A DNA stretch of 64,000 nucleotides from NCBI RefSeq assembly GCF_035594765.1, contig NW_026943821.1, positions 22,625,791-22,689,790 on the forward strand. Direction: 5' to 3'. The notes beneath the pieces are model-generated. The model saw only the letters and a program-made list of their open reading frames with translations. It was not told the origin of the DNA and made no database searches. This document shows positions 147-63,440 of this stretch, in pieces (position 1 is the stretch's first letter; each line of letters starts with the position of its first letter). Position numbers and translations under genes: made by a program. The DNA is from Anolis carolinensis. Its lineage: Eukaryota.

Positions 147-3100
147 ATGGCATTCAACGGCACGTGGCAGGTCTATTCCCAGGAGAACTACGAAGATTTC
201 CTGAAGGCTATTGGTAAGCAACTGGTGGGCTATGTTATCAAAGGGGATTACATTCCTCCATAGAGCACCAATCCCTAAACTGAGGCCATCTAGATAGGTA
301 ACATGTCTCCTCATCCTCATCTTTGAGGGATAGGAACTGTTTTCTCGAAGACGCTGAGCTAGAGACCTTGCAAAACTACAACTCACATGATCCCATAGCA
401 TTGAGCCATGGCAGTTCTAGTGGTGCGAAACGGCATTAATTCTAGAGTGACCAAGAAGTTAAATGAATTTTTGGCCCAATCCAACAGGAGAACATTGATG
501 TCCATAATCCTTGCATTTTCAGTGCCTAACCAAAAGCATGGCTACTTATTTTTGGGATTCTGTTCTTCAGCTTTGCCCGATGATATCATCAAAGCCGCCA
601 AAGACGTCAAGCCGGTAACTGAAATCCGCCAGACGGGGAACACCTTCGTCGTCACCTCCAAGACCCCCAACAAGTCTGTCACAAACTCATTCACACTGGG
701 GAAAGAGGCGGACATGACCACCATGGACGGCAAGAAAGTCAAGGTAACTCACATTTACGTTGACCATATGATCGTGTTGGAGAGCCTATGAATACCTAGA
801 AAAATCGTCTCTAGGAATCTCTAAGTTCTCCACGATGACCAAACCATGTTAGAGGACCTACAAAAGGCTAGAGAAATGTTCTCTCTACGAATCTCTAGGT
901 CAGAGGTCCCCAAACTAAGGTCCGCAAGTCAGATGTGGCCCTCTGAGGTCATTTCCTTGGCCCCCGCCCTAAACTTTAGCTTAGGGTTACCCTAAGTCTG
1001 AAACAACTTGAAGGCACACAACAACAATCCTAATTGACTTGATTCTCTCATCAGCCAAAAGCAGCTCCATACTTCCCATTGAAATACTGGTATGTTTATG
1101 TTGGTGAAAGCTGTTTTTGCTTCTAAAGATTGTATTATTTTATGGGTTTTTTTGCACTACAAATAAGATATGTGCAGTGTGCATAAAAATGGTTCATTTC
1201 TTAAAATACAGCCCAGCCCACCAACAATTTTGGGGACTATGAACTGAACCTGGGCTTAAAAGGTTTGAGGACCCCTGCTCGATGTCTTCCAGGGCAGCTG
1301 ATGCATAACAATACAGAAAACCAATGAATGCAAACCAGTCTAGTCCAAGAGTGGGAATCATATAACCCTTCAGATGTTGTTGGACTGCAACTCCCAGCAT
1401 TGCTTCCCATTGACAATGGCTGGCTAAGGCAGTTGGCTGTAAAGTTCCCATTCCCTTTCCAATCCTTCTCCCTTTGTATTAATTTAATAATATGTGCGCC
1501 ATCCTGGGATCTTTTGATACTGGAAAGGAATCTGTGAAGAAGTAAAATAAATAACTACCCCCTTTATCTCCACTGCTCAATCAATTGTTCAACAACATCT
1601 TTTATTTCCTTATTCAAACAGTGCACAGTGAACCTGGTCAATGGGAAGCTGGTCGCCAAATCGGATAAATTTGTCCATGAACAGGAAATAGTAGGCAACG
1701 AAATGGTCGAGGTATGTAAATCTTGTGAATCTGAAGAAGAAATAGAAAGTTTATTTCTTTAAATCCAGATGTTCTACAAGCACCGCAGCTCCCACCATTT
1801 AGTTACACCAGGCATGGGCAAACTTCGCCCCTCCAGGTGTTTTGGACTTCAGCTCCCAAAATCCCTAACAGCCTACCGGCTGTTAGGAATTGTGGGAGTT
1901 GAAGTCCAAAACACCTGGAGGGCCAAAGTTTGTCCATGCCTGAGTTACACTGTTGTGGGATCTGCATCCCGAAAACATCTGGAGAACACCAGACTGCCTG
2001 TAGCTGTTGCAGAGTTTTCTTAACATAGATCTGTTAATTATTGTGTATATTAAATAAAAAATAATGTGTGGCATTTAAAAAAAGGATGATGATGATATCA
2101 ACAGCTGTGCTATCTGTCCTGGTCGTCTCGTTGTCTTGTCCTCGGTGTGTGGCTTTCTTCTGCCACTAATGGGTACATCTACACTATAGTATTAATGCAG
2201 TTTGGCACCTCTTAAACTTCCAAGGCTCAATGCTATGCCATCATGGGAGTTGTAGTTTTATAACGTCTTGAGCTTTCTCTGCCAAAGAGTGCTAGTGGTT
2301 CAACAAAGTTACAACTCCCAGGATTCCGTAGCATTGAGCCATGGAAGTTCAAGTGATGTCAAAACTGCATTAATTCCACAGTGTAGATGCACCCTAACTC
2401 TGTTCCTATTTGTGATCACATTCCATTGATTTCCTAATTTACTTTCCCCAATCTGGTACTACAAACCTCACCATCCCCATCCATTGGGTCTACCATGTTG
2501 ACTGGGAATGATGATACATGTAGTCCTTTCCATCCGGATGGGATAGAGAAAAGGTGCTATGAATGATTATCTGCAGTCATTCCAGTTCTAAGTTTCATAA
2601 GGGTAAAAGTAATAACAACAACAACAACAATAATAACTTTATTCTTATACCCCACCACCATCTCCCCAAAGGGACTTGGGGCGGCTTACATGGGGACAAG
2701 CCCAACAGTAACATTCGGTTAAAACATGATTTATGAATAAAAGCAATGCAAACAATAAATATACATAAAACTACATAAAACATAGCCATTTCTTTAAAAT
2801 CTAACCACAGATACTGCATATGCAGAGGGAGACTTGCGCAGGACCCTGTGCAGGGTTCGTGGATAGTATTGGGAGGTTTTCCCCTGACCTTAAGTCTAGT
2901 CATGTCCAACTCTGGGGGTTGATGCTCATCTCCATCTCTAAGCCAAAGAGCCAGCGTTGTCCATAGACACCTTCTAGGTCATGTGGCCACTGGCATGACT
3001 GCATGGAGCGCCGTTACCTTCCCGCCGGAGTGGTACCTATTGATCTACTTACATTTGTATGGTTTCAAATTGCTGGGTTGGCAAAAGCTGGGGCTAACAG

Positions 3101-3729: not shown

Positions 3730-4439
3730 TATATACATAAAACCCAAAAAACAAACCTTAATTTGGCCATATCCTATAAAGAGACACCATGTTACTCCAC
3801 CATTGTATATAATGGGATTTGAGCATCCAGGGATCTGGGTGTGGATACCGATATTTTTATATTTGGATAATAAAGTACTCTGTATATCATGGATATCGTC
3901 TGGATTCGTTTCCTTTACCGAAATGCTAAGTACTTTTGGCTGAATCTGCACTGTAGAATTAATGCAGTTTGATTCCACTTGGCTCAATGATCTGAGATCC
4001 CGGGAGCTGTCGTTTTACAAGGTCTGCAGCCTTCTCTGCCAAACTACATCTCCCAAGGTTCCATAGCATTGGATCATAGTCATTAAAGTGGTGTCAAACT
4101 GCATTAACAATACAGTGTAGATCAGGCATGGGCAAACTTGGGCCCTCCAGGTGTTTTGGACTTCAACTCCCACAATTCCTAACAGCCTACCGGCTGTTAG
4201 GAATTGTGGGAGTTGAAGTCCAAAACACCTGGAGGGCCCAAGTTTGCCCATATTATTCCACTAAATCCAGTTTCTGCCACCTGAGGAATTCTGGGACTTG
4301 TAGTTTAAGGGCTTTTAAAATACTCCGCCAGAGAGTTTCTGGGTCTCACTAAACTACAAACCTCAGAATTCTGCAGCAAACCGGATTTAAAGCGGATCCA
4401 TGCTCATTTGTAGTGAAGGCCCAAAGCCTGGGAAACATT

Positions 4440-19734: not shown

Positions 19735-20017
19735 GGACCAGCTAACACCTCCCAACAAAGGATCCCCCCAGGAAGGAAGAAGCCAGGCTTTGAAGCTGCA
19801 AGGCCATTCAGTGCTAATCAAGGTAGCCAATGGCAACATTCACACTTGCCTCAAGCAGAGAAGAGTTCTTTCTCTCACCTTGGACCTTAAACTCCACTTG
19901 CCTAGTTTCCAACAGACCTCACATCCTCTGAGGATGTCTGCCCTAGATGTGGGTGAAACGTCAGGATAGTATGCTCCAAAACATAGCCATACAGCTCAGA
20001 AAACTCACAGCAACCCA
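19735..20017 (+). mobile_element. Penelope-like element 3'/pLTR fragment with hammerhead core at 19925-19965
   Basis: Same family as 30683-32400 and 61230-62580; contains CCT-CTGAGGA-TGTCTGCCCTAGATGTGGGT-GAAA-CGTC-AGG. Confidence 0.7.
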
Positions 20018-20039
20018 ATATGGCAACAGCATTATTATA

Positions 20040-20645
20040 GTATTCCTAACCTGGGGATCACAGCTAGAGACAGTGAAGACATCTGCTCTTGTGCTTGGCT
20101 ACTCTGCTGCTGAATATTCATGCCCAGTGTGGAATACATCTCACCATAATAAAACAGTGGATGTGGCTCTCAGTGAGACATGTTGCATTATCACAGGATG
20201 TCTATGCCCTACATCACTGGAGAATTTAGGTGGCGTCATACCACCTGATATCCATCAGGAAGTAGCAGCTAGCAATGAAAGGACCAAGGCATTAACATCT
20301 CCAGATCATCCTCTGTTCGGATATCAGCCAGCATGCCAAGTTCTTAAATCAAGAAACTGCTTCCTAAGATCTAAGGAGACACTCACGGGAACTCCTCAGC
20401 AAGCGAGAGTCCAAAAGTGGCAGGCTAAAATCCAAAACCTCAATCTGGCTGATACCAGATGAGAAACTTCCTCCTGGGCACACAGAGGACTGGGTGATTT
20501 GGAAGGTACTGAACAGACTGAGCTGTGGGACCACGAGATGCAAATCTAACCTTAAGAAATGGAGCCACAAAGTGGAATCCACGACATGTGAGTGTAGAGA
20601 GGAGCAGACCACTGACTACAATGCAGCCTGAGCCCTGCCGATGCA
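20040..20645 (+). mobile_element. Degenerate LINE 3' fragment (Vingi/Ingi-like, post-RT region)
   Basis: Translation WGSQLETVKTSALVLGYSAAEYSCPVW...ITGCLCPT, followed by a C-terminal CECxEEQT zinc-knuckle-like remnant; contains stops. Confidence 0.55.
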
Positions 20646-30208: not shown

Positions 30209-33200
30209 ATGGAGGCCTGTGTGATGCTCCTGCTGGTGTTTTCCGTCGCGGCCGCGTCTCCTCAGCGCTACACGCCGGACTGGGAGAGCCTGGACTCGCG
30301 GCCGCTGCCCGGCTGGTTCGACGCGGCGAAGGTGGGCGTCTTCGTGCACTGGGGTGTCTTTTCGGTCCCGGCCTGGGGCTCGGAGTGGTTCTGGTGGCAC
30401 TGGCGGGGCGAGCAGCAGCCTGAGTACGAGCGCTTCATGCAGGCCCGTTTCCCGCCGGGCACCACCTACGCCGACCTCGCGCCCCGCTTCACCGCCCGGG
30501 ACTTCCAGCCCGAGGCCTGGGCCCAGCTCTTCCAAGAGGCCGGCGCCAGGTAGGAAACGGGGCCGGGAGGAATTGGGGTTGTTGGGGTTGTGTGTCTTCC
30601 AGTCATTTCCGGCGGAGGGCGACCCTCAGTCTACATGTGTTTTGGACTTCAGCTCCCACAATTCCTAACAGCCGGGAGGCTGGGTTGCTGTGAGTATTCC
30701 GGTCTGTATGGCCATGTTCTAGAAGCATTCTCTCCTGATGTTTCACCCACATCTGTGGCAGGCATCCTCAGAGGTTGTGAGGTCTGTTGGAAATAGGCAA
30801 GTGGGGTTTATATATCTGTGGAATGTTCAGGGTGGGAGAAAGAACTCTTATCTGAGTTGTGAGTTTTCCGAGCTGTATGGCCATGTTCCAGAAGCATTGT
30901 CTCCTGATGTTTCGCCCACATTTGTGGCAGGCATCATCAGAGGTTGTGAGGTCTGTTGGAAATAGGCAAGTGGGGTTTATATATCTGTGGAATGTTCAGG
31001 GTGGGAGAAAGAACTCTTGTCTGAGTTGTGAGTTTTCCGAGCTGTATGGCCATGTTTCAGAAGCATTCTCTCCTGATGTTTCACCCACATCTGTGGCAGG
31101 CATCCTCAGAGGTTGTGAGGTCTGTTGGAAATAGGCAAGTGGGATTTATATATCTGTGGAATGTTCAGGGTGGGAGAAAGAACTCTTGTCTGAGTTGTGA
31201 GTTTTCCGAGCTGTATGGCCATGTTCCAGAAGTATTCTCTCCTGATGTTTCACCCACATCTGTGGCAGACATCCTCAGAGGTTGTGAGGCCTGTTGGAAA
31301 TAGGCAAATGGGGTTTATATATCTGTGGAATGCTCAGGGTGGGAGAACTCTTGTCTGAGTTGTGAGTTTTCCGAGCTGTATGGCCATGTTCCAGAAGCAT
31401 TCTCTCCTGATGTTTCATCCACATCTGTGGCAGGCATCCTCAGAGGTTGTGAGGTCTGTTGGAAATAGGGAAGTGAGGTTTATATATCTGTGGAATGTTC
31501 AGGGTGGGAGAAAGAACTCTTGTCTGAGTTGTGAGTTTTCCGAGCTGTATGGCCATGTTCCAGAAGCATTCTCTCCTGATGTTTCACCCACATCTATGGC
31601 AGGCATCCTCAGAGGTTGTGAAGATGTCTGAGGCGAGTGTGAATGTTAAGGCAAGAGGTCACTATAACCAGAAATGTAATCTAATAATATAAACTATAAA
31701 ACAGTATTTCTTATATATGCTATTGTCATAGAACATTCATTGTACAAACAAGGGTGATAGAGATTCAAAATATACTAAATTATTCAAAAAACCTGTCTCT
31801 AAAGCAAAATATAATCAATGTGTTACAAACACACATACATTCATAGAAAGCAGAACTCTTATATTCAGGGTTTGTGAGTCCAATGACAACCAGAGTTCAT
31901 GTTCCACACGGAGGACTGTATAAATCACTAATTGTAAGTCCAAATCTATATGTCCAAGTTAGTGAATCCTTTTTTTAAAATCCAATGTTTTAAACAAATC
32001 CAAGAGGTTGTGAAGATGTCTGAGGCGAGTGTGAATGTTGCCACCGACCACCTTGATTAGCATTTAATGGCTTTGCAGATTCAAAGCCTGGCTGCTTCCT
32101 GCTTGGTGGAATCCTTTGTTGGGAAGTGTTAATTGGCCCTGATTGTTTCTTGTCTGGAATTCCTCTGTCTTCTGAGTGTTGTTCTTTATTTACTGGACAC
32201 AGCATATTATTTGAGAGCACAGAAGTGTTGGACCACTCTGACAACCGCCATCTGAAGACTACACAGAAACGCCATTGAAATTCAAAAGCATGCGAACAAT
32301 CTTAACAGAAAGGAAGAAACTATGAAAATGAACAAAATCTTGGCTATCAGTATTAGAAAACTCTAAAATCAGGATAGTAAATAAAAAACAACACTCAGAT
32401 ACATTGAGGCCCAGAATGAGGCCAGTTGGGAAGTCATGTCCCAAGCCGAAACGGACGAGTTTGCCAGCCAGTTTGACGGGGGTGCCGCTTCTCCCACCCA
32501 TTTGCTATCTCTTAAATATGGGTATATTTACGGTGAGTTCTCCTTCCTGACTTTATACTCTCCCTTTGCCTATAGATATGTGGTGCTGACCACAAAGCAT
32601 CACGAAGGCTTCACCAACTGGGGTTCCCCCATGTCCTGGAACTGGAACTCAGTAGATACAGGGCCCCATAGAGACTTGGTGGGAGAACTGGGAGATGCCC
32701 TCCGAAAAAGGTATGAATGTGGGTTCAAAGGTTGAGTCATGGGGCTGTGCTTAGGAGCTTTCTAATCACTTGTGGATCTTTTGTTCTAATCTTTAGGAAC
32801 ATACATTATGGGCTGTATCACTCCCTCTATGAATGGTTTCATCCACTTTATTTGCTGGACAAAAACAATGGATTCAAGAGTCAATTTTTTGTCTCTGAGA
32901 AGACTATGCCAGAGCTTTTTGACCTTGTTTTAAGGTAAGAGCAGAACACCATAAAAAAACCCTAGAATGTTTGAGATACAAAACATATTTACCTATATAC
33001 CTGGATCATGTAAAATATCTTGGGCAAAAAGGGGTCATGAATGAAAAGCTTTTAAGAAGCCCTGCTCTCTCGTCAGAAAAAAACACAAACTCTTCATGTG
33101 CTTGGTTTTAAGGGGGAAGGTTTATTATCTTTAATATTCCTTCACTTTAATATTAGCTAGCAAGATATGTCTAGTCCTTAGAATGTGAAGTTCCCTACCC

Positions 33201-53601: not shown

Positions 53602-54384
53602 TGCAATGTGCATAATTCCCATGGAGTAAACAACAAAACAACTGGACCTGGACCAAATCACACCAAATTTGGTCACAAAAGACATAGTCATCCAATCAAT
53701 CTGCATGCAGCAGCGTATCAGCAAAAATGATTAGGCGTGTCAGTGCTGACATGCGTGTCATAGGTTGGCCATCACTGTTTTAAGGTATTTATTATGGTCA
53801 GTTGTTTTATAAACCTCCACTGCCCCCAAGTATCTGAGGGGGAAAAGGAAAGGGCCTGAGGCTGTTAGGAATGATGGGAGTTGAAGTCCAAAACACCTGG
53901 AGAGAAGGCCCAAGTTGGCCCACACCTGCCTTATAGGCATAACCTGAAAGTCATTTTATACATAGGTAAAGGTAAAAGTTTTCCCATGACATTAAGTCCA
54001 GTCGTATCCGACTCTGGGGGTTGGTGCTCTTCTCCATTTCTAAGCCAAAGAGCCAACATTGTCCATAGACACTTCCTAGGTCATGTGGACACTGGCATGA
54101 CTGTATGGAATGCTGTTACCTTCCCGCCGGAGCAGTACCTATTGATCTACTCACATTTACATGTTTTCGAACTGCTAGGTTGGCAGAAGCTGGAGCTGAC
54201 AGCAGGAGCTCACTCCTCTTACCGGATTCGAACCGGCAACCATTTGGTCAGCAAGTTCAGCAGCTCAGCGGTTTAATCCGCTGCGCCACTGTGGGCTCCC
54301 TTTTATACATACTCCCTCTTAATACGAATTGTGTGCATCAAAGTGTGTGTGCCATCGGAAATAAAAGGTGCCACCATCTCAGCC

Positions 54385-62322: not shown

Positions 62323-62578
62323 TGGGTTGCTGTGAATTTTCCTGGCTGACTGGCCATGTTCCAAAAGCATTCTCTCCTGACGTTTCGCCCATATCTATGA
62401 CAAACATCCTCAGAGGTTTGTGAGGTCTGTTGGAAATTAGGCAAGTGGAAACTAGGCATTCTAGAGATACATAAACCCCACTTGCCTAGTTTCCAACACA
62501 CCTCACAACCTCTGAGGATGCCTGCCATAGATCTGGGCGAAACGTCAGGAGAGAATGCTTCTGGAACATGGCCATACA
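62323..62578. mobile_element. Penelope-like element pLTR inverted pair with two hammerhead cores
   Basis: Minus-strand core 62376-62416 and plus-strand core 62509-62549 (CCT-CTGAGGA-TGCCTGCCATAGATCTGGGC-GAAA-CGTC-AGG). Confidence 0.72.
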
Positions 62579-63440
62579 GATACATAAATCCCACTTGCCT
62601 AGTTTCCAGTATACCTCACAACCTCACAATATATGGTACATTTATTATTTTTCTCCATTATTGTTGCTACTATTACATTTATTTTACTCTATTTGTATTA
62701 TTATTTTTAATAGGTTTATTATTTCACTCCGATATTATTATTATATTTATTATTTTACTCTATTTATTATTACATGTATTATTTTCCTGTATTTATTATT
62801 ACTACAGTAGAGTCTCACTTATCCAAGCTAAACGGGCCAGCAGAAGCTTGGATAAGTGAATATCTTGGATAATAAGGAGGAATTAAGGAAAAACCTATTA
62901 AACATCAAATTAGGTTATGATTTTACAAATTAAGCACCAAAACATCATGTTATACAACAAATTTGACAGAAAAAATAGTTCAATACGCAGTAATGCTATG
63001 TTGTAATTACTGTATTTACGAATTTAGCACCAAAATATCATGATATATTGAAAACATTGACTACAAAAATGGCTTGGATAATCCAGAAGCTTGGAGAAGC
63101 GAGGATTGGATAAGTGAGACTCTACTGTATTATTATTACATGTATTATTTTACTCTATTATTATTAAAAGGATACATAAGCACATTTACACTGAAGAAGA
63201 TGAGAATCATGATTTGATCAGAATTGGACAGTCTTATCTTAAATTTGAGCTTTATGTAAATATTTGAAAAACATTTCACCTACTGATGCCTCAATTAATG
63301 TAATTTTATTGCTATCTGTTTTTATTTCTGAAATTTACCACCCTTGGCTTACACTGGAGTCAATGTTTTCCCAGGTTTTTTTTGTGATAAAATTAGGTGC
63401 CTCGGCTTATATTCGGGTCGGCTTATACTCGAGTATATAC

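What the first reader, a model, noticed from the sequence alone, without database searches (positions are those of the whole stretch)
30683..31621. Retrozyme-like array: 169-bp tandem repeat with a hammerhead ribozyme core in every unit, antisense in FUCA1 intron 1
Seen: about 5.5 head-to-tail units of 169 bp. On the minus strand each unit (30734-30774, 30903-30943, 31072-31112, 31241-31281, 31406-31446, 31575-31615) reads CCU-CUGA(G/U)GA-U-GCCUGC-loop-GUGGG(C/U)-GAAA-CAUC-AGG, with minor variants. That is the CUGANGA and GAAA boxes, a 6-bp stem II, a 3-bp stem I (CCU/AGG) and an NUH cleavage triplet, i.e. a minimal type-I hammerhead. Established: Penelope-like elements carry such minimal, dimer-acting hammerheads, and animal non-LTR retrozymes (newt satellite 2, schistosome Sm-alpha) are short tandem repeats with one hammerhead per unit that yield monomeric and circular RNA. 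Inference: this may be a lizard retrozyme-like array made by rolling-circle reverse transcription of a ~169-nt circle, or an incipient one. Caveat: all six units have stem III ACAU rather than the palindromic ACGU seen at 19958 and 62542, which should weaken dimeric cleavage and shows the change preceded amplification.
Basis: partly seen in the sequence, partly recalled or inferred. Interest (0 to 1): 0.85.

Follow-up and report, generated by a model that had tools for sequence, protein, structure and literature searches.

The report
Tandem Penelope-element junction repeats, decayed hammerheads
A real 5.5-copy, 169-bp tandem repeat in intron 1 of the fucosidase gene is a locally amplified end-piece of one old Penelope-like retrotransposon; each unit carries that transposon's published hammerhead ribozyme motif in a mutated, probably dead form, so the finding is ordinary.

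Summary
The array is 5.5 units of 169 bp (30689-31621). Each unit has CUGANGA...GAAAC on the minus strand, at exactly the six places listed.

- **What the unit is:** about 92 bp of pseudo-LTR plus the first 77 nt of the ORF of a Poseidon-type Penelope-like element (PLE). The hammerhead matches the one published for Poseidon_Ac (PMC11167929).
- **Where it sits:** inside one 5'-truncated PLE copy. Upstream it runs into that copy's pLTR and ORF C-terminus. Downstream it ends at the usual +85 terminus. It is not a free-standing insertion made from a 169-nt circle.
- **State of the ribozyme:** both CpGs have decayed. ACGU has become ACAU in 6/6 units and GGGCG has become GGGUG in 5/6. Most family copies keep G and C.
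- **How it grew:** edge units keep family letters where inner units share derived ones (P about 0.001-0.008 for chance reversion). This points to stepwise DNA-level amplification.
- **RNA evidence:** the monomer is not unusually structured (z +1.24). No RNA evidence could be obtained.

PLE-derived retrozyme-like arrays in reptiles, averaging 176 bp, are already described (bioRxiv 10.64898/2026.07.22.740005). This scan has noted sister arrays on other DNA of the same genome (s1-528343, s1-535999, s1-528395). Interest is low.

The parts
30681..31647 (-). Tandem array within the PLE copy. U1 31530-31647 (partial, pLTR internally deleted), U2 31361-31529, U3 31196-31360 (165 bp), U4 31027-31195, U5 30858-31026, U6 30681-30857 (runs on to the normal +85 terminus ...CTCACAGCAACCCA). 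Each full unit is about 92 bp of pLTR 3' part plus ORF nt +1..+77.
   Evidence: compared by eye with the Poseidon_Ac consensus
30734..30774 (-). Hammerhead motif of U6, 41 nt. The same motif lies at 30903-30943 (U5), 31072-31112 (U4), 31241-31281 (U3), 31406-31446 (U2) and 31575-31615 (U1). The expected cleavage site is after C17, between 30737 and 30736 in U6. Helix III reads ACAU in all six. The stem II closing pair is G.U in five units and G-C only in U5.
31648..32002 (-). 355-bp AT-rich insertion that splits the parent PLE's pLTR just before the hammerhead. It is flanked by an exact 37-nt direct repeat (31611-31647 = 32003-32039), which looks like a target-site duplication.
32003..32193 (-). 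Upstream remainder of the same PLE copy. The last ~40 codons of the PLE ORF ([14 protein letters not shown]..., 32193 to about 32073) are followed by the 5' part of the pLTR (about 32072-32003). The copy is 5'-truncated at about 32200.
   Evidence: by-eye match to the Poseidon_Ac C-terminus VNKKQYSENRGFPD...
30637..30680 (-). Half of an unrelated palindromic MITE-like repeat (...GGCTGTTAGGAATTGTGGGAGCTGAAGTCCAAAACAC) that abuts the PLE 3' terminus. It is not part of the PLE.
   Evidence: loose ends at 30637 and 30673
30209..30548 (+). FUCA1 exon 1 (start codon to the splice donor AG|GTAGGA). The PLE terminus lies 132 bp downstream of it, in antisense orientation.

Best explanation
The array is a local minisatellite. 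It was made by amplifying a 169-bp segment, the pLTR/ORF-start junction that contains the element's minimal hammerhead, inside a single old, 5'-truncated Poseidon-type Penelope-like retrotransposon. That copy had inserted antisense into FUCA1 intron 1. One initial duplication joined ORF position +77 to pLTR position about -92. The array then grew to 5.5 units at the DNA level, by unequal crossing-over or replication slippage. The amplified copy already carried CpG-decay mutations in the ribozyme: the stem II closing pair G-C had become G.U, and the helix III palindrome ACGU had become ACAU. The hammerheads are therefore most likely inactive relics, and the locus is not a working retrozyme. Shown here: the anatomy, the homology, the derived state of the mutations, and the pattern of variants among units. 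Inferred: that the ribozyme is inactive, and the DNA-level mechanism of growth.
For: (1) Unit identity. The ORF part matches the Poseidon_Ac consensus at all but three of its first 57 nt. The pLTR end CCTCACAACCTCTGAGG is identical. [quoted passage not shown] (2) The array is embedded in a parent element. Upstream lie the pLTR 5' part and the ORF C-terminal codons. Downstream lies the usual +85 terminus, also seen in dispersed copies at 20013 and 62331 next to AT-rich DNA (RT start sites). (3) The family is hugely abundant: 18,000-104,000 contigs per run were laid on the stretch. Its majority letters are G at the ACAU site (70-82% of contig depth at 30739, 31077, 31246, 31411, 31580), C at GGGTG (about 50%) and T at +11. 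All four dispersed copies in the window have ACGT. The array's letters are therefore derived CpG transitions shared by all units, while another CpG (CTCGG) is intact in the units. (4) Thirteen minority letters occur among the units in the 89-nt ORF part. Three equal the family state, at three of the only four sites where the array consensus differs from the family: U1 +11, U5 +21, U6 +64. The chance of this by reversion is 0.001-0.008. Two of the three are in the edge units and give the pattern L(T,T), H(C,T)x4, R(C,C), which is what unequal crossover from an initial dimer predicts. (5) The junction is unique to the array in the window. About 140-190 family contigs per run continue past +77 into the normal ...GCAACCCAGTGATT tail instead (loose ends at 31530). 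(6) The cleavage-to-cleavage monomer folds no better than shuffles (z +1.24). (7) Published work reports that PLEs form partial tandems and that their terminal pieces give local tandem arrays.
Against: No RNA data could be examined. All available runs were contigs, none certainly RNA, and all were swamped by family copies. Transcription and processing are therefore untested. The PAc hammerhead is protein-assisted and cleaves poorly on its own, so predicting activity from pairing rules is uncertain. The first duplication could equally have been made by an RT template switch: another copy in the window (62457-62625) has a 1.5-mer with a different junction (+63), and PLE insertion is known to make partial tandems. 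The family state rests on four outgroup copies plus contig majorities, and the reversion test was designed after seeing the data. Ectopic gene conversion from other family copies could mimic retained ancestral letters. At least three other such arrays are noted in this genome, which may hint at a mechanism more specific than chance slippage.
Confidence: 0.8

Rival explanations
1. A genuine, if weak or ageing, non-LTR retrozyme. The array was made by PLE reverse transcriptase copying a circular or multimeric 169-nt RNA, or by repeated template jumps. Antisense transcription still yields unit-length linear or circular RNA with help from PLE protein.
For: The form fits the published operational definition: tandem units of ~170 bp, each with a minimal type-I hammerhead. 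The mean unit length in reptiles is 176 bp and most families have <=7 units. The 3' boundary of the junction (+77) lies close to the AC-rich RT-initiation zone at ~+85. Sister arrays exist elsewhere in this genome. The PAc hammerhead needs protein, so weak pairing alone does not prove it is dead.
Against: The array is continuous with a parent PLE's pLTR and ORF 3' end and stops at the normal terminus. A circle-templated insertion should have arbitrary phase and abut target DNA. Five identical non-homologous jumps are improbable. The units were not all identical at birth. The helix III palindrome is broken in 6/6 units and stem II is weakened in 5/6. The monomer is not self-paired. The junction is not seen as a family feature. 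Frangieh et al. found no RNA-seq reads ending at the cleavage site even for intact PAc.
Confidence: 0.12
2. The first duplication only was produced during retrotransposition, by an RT template switch from the pLTR back to the ORF start region. Later growth was by unequal crossover. The hammerhead plays no part.
For: PLEs typically insert as partial tandems. A second copy in the window shows a different partial-tandem junction at +63|pLTR with ACAG microhomology. The array junction has at most 1-2 nt of homology.
Against: Both CpG decays and the shared 1-nt deletion in 'CCTATTTCC' predate the amplification. This fits a resident, ageing DNA copy better than a fresh cDNA, although a decayed source copy could give the same result. 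This rival overlaps the best explanation for all later steps, so its probability is not additive with it.
Confidence: 0.3
3. An assembly artefact: a collapsed or expanded repeat, with no real 5.5-unit array.
For: No contig in four public runs spans the stretch.
Against: The units differ by private substitutions and a 4-nt deletion, which is not the pattern of artefactual identical copies. Short-read contigs are expected to break in a family this abundant.
Confidence: 0.03

Closest known systems
Poseidon_Ac (PAc), the Penelope/Poseidon-clade PLE of Anolis carolinensis, and its pLTR-ORF junction hammerhead (Frangieh et al. 2024, PMC11167929; Cervera & de la Pena 2014, PMC4209133)
   Same: The architecture is the same: the pLTR ends ...CCTCACAACCTCTGAGG, the ATG sits at the start of stem II, the cut site is 26 nt after the start codon, there is an unpaired U before stem II, helix I is short, and the terminus is at about +85. 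The first 57 ORF nt differ at only 3 sites. The ORF C-terminus is recognisable upstream.
   Different: This is a related but diverged subfamily after +57 and in the pLTR. This copy is 5'-truncated, lacking RT and endonuclease. Its junction piece is amplified 5.5-fold. Its hammerhead has ACAU for ACGU and G.U for G-C.
Vertebrate non-LTR retrozymes as PLE pLTR derivatives (Li, Clavereau & Pollet, bioRxiv 10.64898/2026.07.22.740005; Cervera & de la Pena 2020, PMC7229834)
   Same: Short tandem repeats of ~170 bp with one type-I hammerhead per unit, derived from a PLE terminal region. These are reported in 4 of 5 reptiles, with a mean consensus of 176 bp and mostly <=7 units. Local amplification of a PLE terminal piece is the proposed origin.
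   Different: Here the array is still attached to its parent PLE. Its ribozyme is decayed and the monomer is not highly self-paired. Neither expression, circles nor spread of the 169-bp unit to other loci has been shown.
Newt satellite 2 / axolotl and Schistosoma Sm-alpha hammerhead repeats
   Same: Tandem units with dimer-dependent type-I hammerheads.
   Different: Those have a helix III hairpin with a palindromic loop and loop-loop tertiary contacts, 10^4-10^5 units, and demonstrated transcripts. This array is a 6-unit local repeat with no helix III.

Membership tests
Penelope-like element (Poseidon/Penelope clade), terminal fragment | pLTR-ORF junction sequence homologous to a known PLE | tested here: met
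   By-eye comparison of units with the Poseidon_Ac consensus. The ORF part differs at 3 of its first 57 nt and the pLTR end is identical.
Penelope-like element (Poseidon/Penelope clade), terminal fragment | 3' terminus at the internal RT initiation site (~+85 or +111-118, the 'tail') | tested here: met
   The last unit ends ...CTCACAGCAACCCA at 30681. Dispersed copies end at the same place before AT-rich DNA, and one carries the tail. The sites are as.
Penelope-like element (Poseidon/Penelope clade), terminal fragment | RT and GIY-YIG ORF upstream of the pLTR | tested here: not met
   Only the last ~40 codons remain and homology stops at about 32200. This is a 5'-truncated, non-autonomous copy, as most PLE insertions are.
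Hammerhead ribozyme, minimal type I (PLE type, dimer-acting) | Conserved core C3-A9 (CUGANGA), G12-A14 (GAA), A15.1-U16.1, H17 | tested here: met
   All six units.
Hammerhead ribozyme, minimal type I (PLE type, dimer-acting) | Palindromic helix III tetranucleotide (ACGU) that lets two copies pair | tested here: not met
   ACAU in 6/6 units. ACGU in all 4 dispersed copies and in 70-82% of family contig depth.
Hammerhead ribozyme, minimal type I (PLE type, dimer-acting) | Stable helix II with a G10.1-C11.1 closing pair | tested here: inconclusive
   Six pairs remain, but 3 are wobbles. The closing pair is G.U in 5/6 units, and U2 adds a C.A mismatch. The effect on a protein-assisted ribozyme is unknown.
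Hammerhead ribozyme, minimal type I (PLE type, dimer-acting) | Match to a curated covariance model (Rfam Hammerhead families) | tested here: inconclusive
   No hit at the gathering score or at E<=10. Intact family copies are missed as well, so the models do not cover this variant.
Hammerhead ribozyme, minimal type I (PLE type, dimer-acting) | Self-cleavage | not testable with these tools
   Needs in vitro transcription of dimers with and without PLE protein.
Metazoan non-LTR retrozyme | Tandem repeats of ~170-400 bp with one type-I hammerhead per unit, non-coding | tested here: met
   Each unit keeps only a 35-codon remnant, [15 protein letters not shown]....
Metazoan non-LTR retrozyme | Expressed as unit-length linear and circular RNA | not testable with these tools
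   No listed holder is on record as RNA. All runs are contigs and are dominated by family copies.
Metazoan non-LTR retrozyme | Monomer RNA predicted to be stable and highly self-paired (PMC7229834) | tested here: not met
   MFE -27.1 kcal/mol against a shuffle mean of -32.3, z +1.24.
Metazoan non-LTR retrozyme | Unit mobilised as such: the same unit and junction at several loci, with arrays flanked by target DNA | tested here: not met
   The array is continuous with the parent PLE pLTR and ORF. The junction is found only here in the window. Family contigs run on past +77 into the normal tail. A genome-wide search was not possible.

The most novel reading that the evidence does not exclude
This array and its sister arrays in the same genome are retrozymes caught at birth. 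They are PLE end-pieces, still attached to the parent element, that are transcribed antisense to host genes and processed, with help from PLE protein, into ~169-nt linear or circular RNAs. The first junction would come from RT re-initiation near the AC-rich start site. That would give in vivo evidence for how PLE tandems and vertebrate retrozymes arise.
Probability: 0.07. Interest if true: 0.5.

Novelty: already known. Interest (0 to 1): 0.15.

Why it matters
It matters little on its own. The element family, its hammerhead, the tendency of PLEs to form partial tandems, and PLE-derived retrozyme-like arrays of about this size in reptiles are all published. The locus does serve as a clean worked example. 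The array is still joined to its parent PLE copy, and edge units keep older letters. This illustrates the 'terminal piece, then local minisatellite' route proposed for the origin of vertebrate non-LTR retrozymes. It also shows that motif-plus-tandem criteria alone will count decayed, probably inert arrays as 'active retrozymes'.

Tried and rejected
- **Rfam.** Searches at the gathering score and at E<=10 found no hammerhead. I rejected this as evidence against the motif because intact family copies are also missed.
- **Energy of a double-hammerhead fold.** This was uninformative. Even intact copies score only about -6 kcal/mol against -25 to -34 for alternative dimers, and C.A 'pairs' cannot be scored properly. 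It is not used.
- **Target-site duplication around the whole array.** None was found. The reason became clear later: the true upstream boundary of the element is at about 32200, beyond a nested insertion.
- **'Tail' beyond +85 in the last unit.** Rejected. 30637-30680 is half of an unrelated palindromic MITE-like repeat that occurs elsewhere in the window.
- **Public reads.** There were no raw-read RNA runs. Contigs cannot show ends, strand or circles, and no contig bridges the array. So there is no evidence for or against expression or copy-number variation.
- **Genome-wide junction search.** Not possible, because the public collections offered for pattern scans are microbial, viral or metagenomic.
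- **Poseidon_Ac consensus.** I compared it by eye only and did not type it into tools, so no computed percent identity is given.
Full report
**Observation**

The minus-strand read of 30500-31800 and Tandem Repeats Finder confirm the array: 30689-31621, period 169, 5.5 copies, 94% matches, score 1698.

The pattern CTGANGA-N(8-36)-GAAAC is found 10 times in the window. Dinucleotide shuffles give 0.96 on average, and none of 100 reached 10. Six of the ten hits lie in the array, on the minus strand. Each reads CCU / CUGA(G/U)GA / U / GCCUGC-loop-GUGGGU / GAA / ACAU / C / AGG, with small variants.

Rfam finds no hammerhead at the gathering score or at E<=10 on the region alone. The same is true for the intact copies at 61.1-62.75 kb. 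The negative result therefore reflects the scope of the models: PLE hammerheads lack a helix III hairpin.

FUCA1 exon 1 is at 30209-30548 on the + strand (Pfam Alpha_L_fucos, E 6.5e-37). The array is therefore antisense in intron 1, and the repeat element begins 132 bp past the splice donor.

**What the unit is**

A within-window BLAST and anchored read-outs show the unit belongs to a dispersed family. Copies lie at about 19.8-20.0 kb (+), 61.2-61.4 kb (-), 61.5-61.6 kb (+), 62.33-62.45 kb (-) and 62.46-62.63 kb (+).

A literature search led to Frangieh et al. 2024 (PMC11167929). Its supplementary file gives the Poseidon_Ac consensus from Anolis carolinensis. I compared it by eye:
- The consensus ORF begins ATGCCTGCCATAGATGTGGGCGAAACGTCAGGAGAGAATGCTTCTGGAACATGGCCA.
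- Its pLTR ends CCTCACAACCTCTGAGG.
- The array consensus differs from the first 57 ORF nt at only three sites (+11, +21, +27).
- The array has the identical pLTR end.

[quoted passage not shown] Both hold here. The hammerhead in the array is therefore the published PLE hammerhead (also Cervera & de la Pena 2014, PMC4209133).

Each 169-bp unit is about 92 bp of pLTR 3' part plus ORF nt +1 to +77. It retains a 35-codon remnant, [15 protein letters not shown]..., against PAc's [15 protein letters not shown]...

**Anatomy of the whole insertion**

The repeat finder showed an exact 37-nt direct repeat, 31611-31647 = 32003-32039. It flanks a 355-bp AT-rich segment.

Reading on upstream in minus sense, positions 32193 to about 32073 encode [30 protein letters not shown]. 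This is recognisably the PAc C-terminus VNKKQYSENRGFPDMNQPRAVNDSKQRMPQ. It is followed by the 5' part of the pLTR.

In minus-sense order the structure is:
- the PLE ORF 3' end;
- the pLTR, split by a later 355-bp insertion that carries a 37-bp duplication;
- the hammerhead and ORF start;
- five repeats of [pLTR -92 ... +77];
- the normal tail-less terminus ...CTCACAGCAACCCA at 30681.

Two dispersed copies end at that same terminus next to AT-rich DNA. One copy carries the longer 'tail'. This agrees with the published RT start sites at about +85 and +111-118.

The 44 bp beyond the terminus (30637-30680) are half of an unrelated palindromic MITE-like repeat found at several other places in the window. 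The array is therefore an internal amplification within one ordinary 5'-truncated PLE copy. An insertion templated by a 169-nt circle would be expected to abut target DNA at an arbitrary phase.

**State of the ribozyme**

All six units have ACAU where all four dispersed copies and the PAc consensus have ACGU. Five of six have GGGUG where the family has GGGCG.

Contigs of four public runs were laid at >=90% likeness. They were overwhelmingly from other family copies: 18,000-104,000 contigs per run, at depths of 10^4-10^6 against tens for the unique flank. They still give the family majority:
- G at the ACAU site in 70-82% of depth in five units;
- C at the GGGTG site in about half;
- T at +11 in up to 94%;
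- an extra base in CCTA(G)TTTCC.

Both ribozyme changes are CpG transitions. Another CpG in the unit (CTCGG) survives in all units, so CpG decay is not saturated. The two shared changes therefore predate the amplification.

From established hammerhead knowledge (my own; Forster et al. 1988, and the min-HHR model in PMC4209133), the ACGU palindrome is what lets two helix-III-less motifs pair into an active double hammerhead. ACAU leaves two A-U pairs around two C.A mismatches. G10.1-C11.1 is the conserved closing pair of helix II. I infer that the motifs are inactive. This is an inference, because the PAc ribozyme is protein-assisted and barely active alone.

An energy calculation for the double-hammerhead fold was uninformative. 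The cleavage-to-cleavage 169-nt monomer folds no better than shuffles (z +1.24; plus strand z -0.68). Retrozyme circles, by contrast, are described as stable and highly self-paired.

**How the array grew**

In the 89-nt ORF part shared by all six units there are 13 minority letters. The array majority differs from the family at four sites. Three of the 13 minority letters fall on those sites and equal the family letter:
- U1 has T at +11;
- U5 has C at +21;
- U6 has C at +64.

Chance reversion would give 0.2-0.4 such cases, P = 0.001-0.008. This is a post hoc test with only four outgroups.

The two edge units give the pattern U1 (T,T), U2-U5 (C,T), U6 (C,C). Unequal crossover between the two units of an initial dimer predicts exactly this: a hybrid inner unit that is then amplified, while the edge units are left behind.

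The units were therefore not all born identical from one template. At least the expansion happened stepwise in DNA, or with gene conversion.

The first junction...GGAAAACTCACA|ACTCAGACAAGAG..., has at most 1-2 nt of homology. It could be a DNA-level event or an RT template switch. The 62.46-62.63 kb copy has a different partial-tandem junction at +63 with ACAG microhomology, so such junctions are made at variable places. Within the window the array's junction 14-mer is unique to the array. About 140-190 family contigs per run continue past +77 into the normal ...GCAACCCAGTGATT sequence (loose ends at 31530).

**RNA**

All are kept as contigs and none is on record as RNA. Laying four of them showed only family-level coverage. 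No piece spanned the stretch, and contigs cannot show ends, strand or circles. Expression is therefore untested. Frangieh et al. saw no RNA-seq reads beginning or ending at the cleavage site even for intact PAc.

**Comparison with what is known**

PLEs are known to form tandem or partial-tandem copies.

Li, Clavereau & Pollet (bioRxiv 10.64898/2026.07.22.740005) report non-LTR retrozymes, defined as a TRF array plus a hammerhead motif in at least 2 consecutive units:
- they occur in 4 of 5 reptiles;
- the mean consensus in Reptilia is 176 bp;
- 75% of families have <=7 units;
- they derive from PLE pLTRs;
- the authors propose that a PLE terminal piece gives rise to local tandem amplification by the usual satellite route.

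In form, this array is an instance of that class. It fails the features that would make it a working retrozyme, or those features could not be tested (see the membership table).

The scan itself has noted the same kind of array on other DNA of this genome:
- s1-528343, 8 x 155 bp, judged ordinary by its follow-up;
- s1-535999 in an AK1 intron;
- s1-528395 in HSPB6 intron 1.

Four arrays in the ~461 windows annotated so far suggests a few hundred genome-wide. This is a rough extrapolation, not a measurement.

**Verdict**

The locus is a decayed, locally amplified end-piece of an abundant lizard retrotransposon. Novelty: already known in kind. Interest is low.

Noticed in passing
window 31648-32002, with repeats 31611-31647 and 32003-32039: A 355-bp AT-rich, moderately repeated segment sits inside the PLE pLTR. 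It is flanked by a perfect 37-nt direct repeat that includes the pLTR's own internal deletion junction. It looks like a later insertion with an unusually long target-site duplication. The inserted element was not identified and has no other copy in the window.
   Followed up: partly
window 62331-62625: Two PLE end-pieces lie head-to-head, 5' ends facing: 62331-62448 on the minus strand and 62457-62625 on the plus strand. Both have intact ACGU hammerheads. The plus copy is a 1.5-mer with its own junction (+63 joined to the pLTR at ACAG). This fits the published finding that PAc primes on both DNA strands, and the scan's earlier notes on head-to-head mini-elements. Rfam gives weak miRNA-precursor-like hits to the resulting hairpin (mir-H1, E 0.005, far below the gathering score).
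   Followed up: partly
window 1800-1945, 4145-4234, 53860-53903, 30637-30680 and about 8 more places: A ~130-bp palindromic MITE-like repeat (...GGCAAACTT..CCTCCAGGTGTTTTGGACTTCAGCTCCCA...GGCTGTTAGGAATTGTGGGAGTTGAAGTCCAAAACACCTGGAGGGCC...) is very abundant in this genome. Its contig depth equals that of the PLE family. Half of one copy abuts the array.
   Followed up: partly
window 30689-31621, + strand: On the FUCA1 sense strand every unit junction reads TTGTGAGTTTTCC, a good GTGAGT splice-donor hexamer. This gives five such hexamers within 1 kb downstream of the real exon 1 donor. No effect on splicing was examined.
   Followed up: no
window 19947-20462 (+): A 171-codon ORF starts inside the hammerhead of the 19.9-kb PLE copy. 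It runs into flanking sequence that looks like the C-terminal part of a LINE reverse-transcriptase ORF (...AAEYSCPVWNTSHH...). The PLE piece probably inserted into an older LINE.
   Followed up: no
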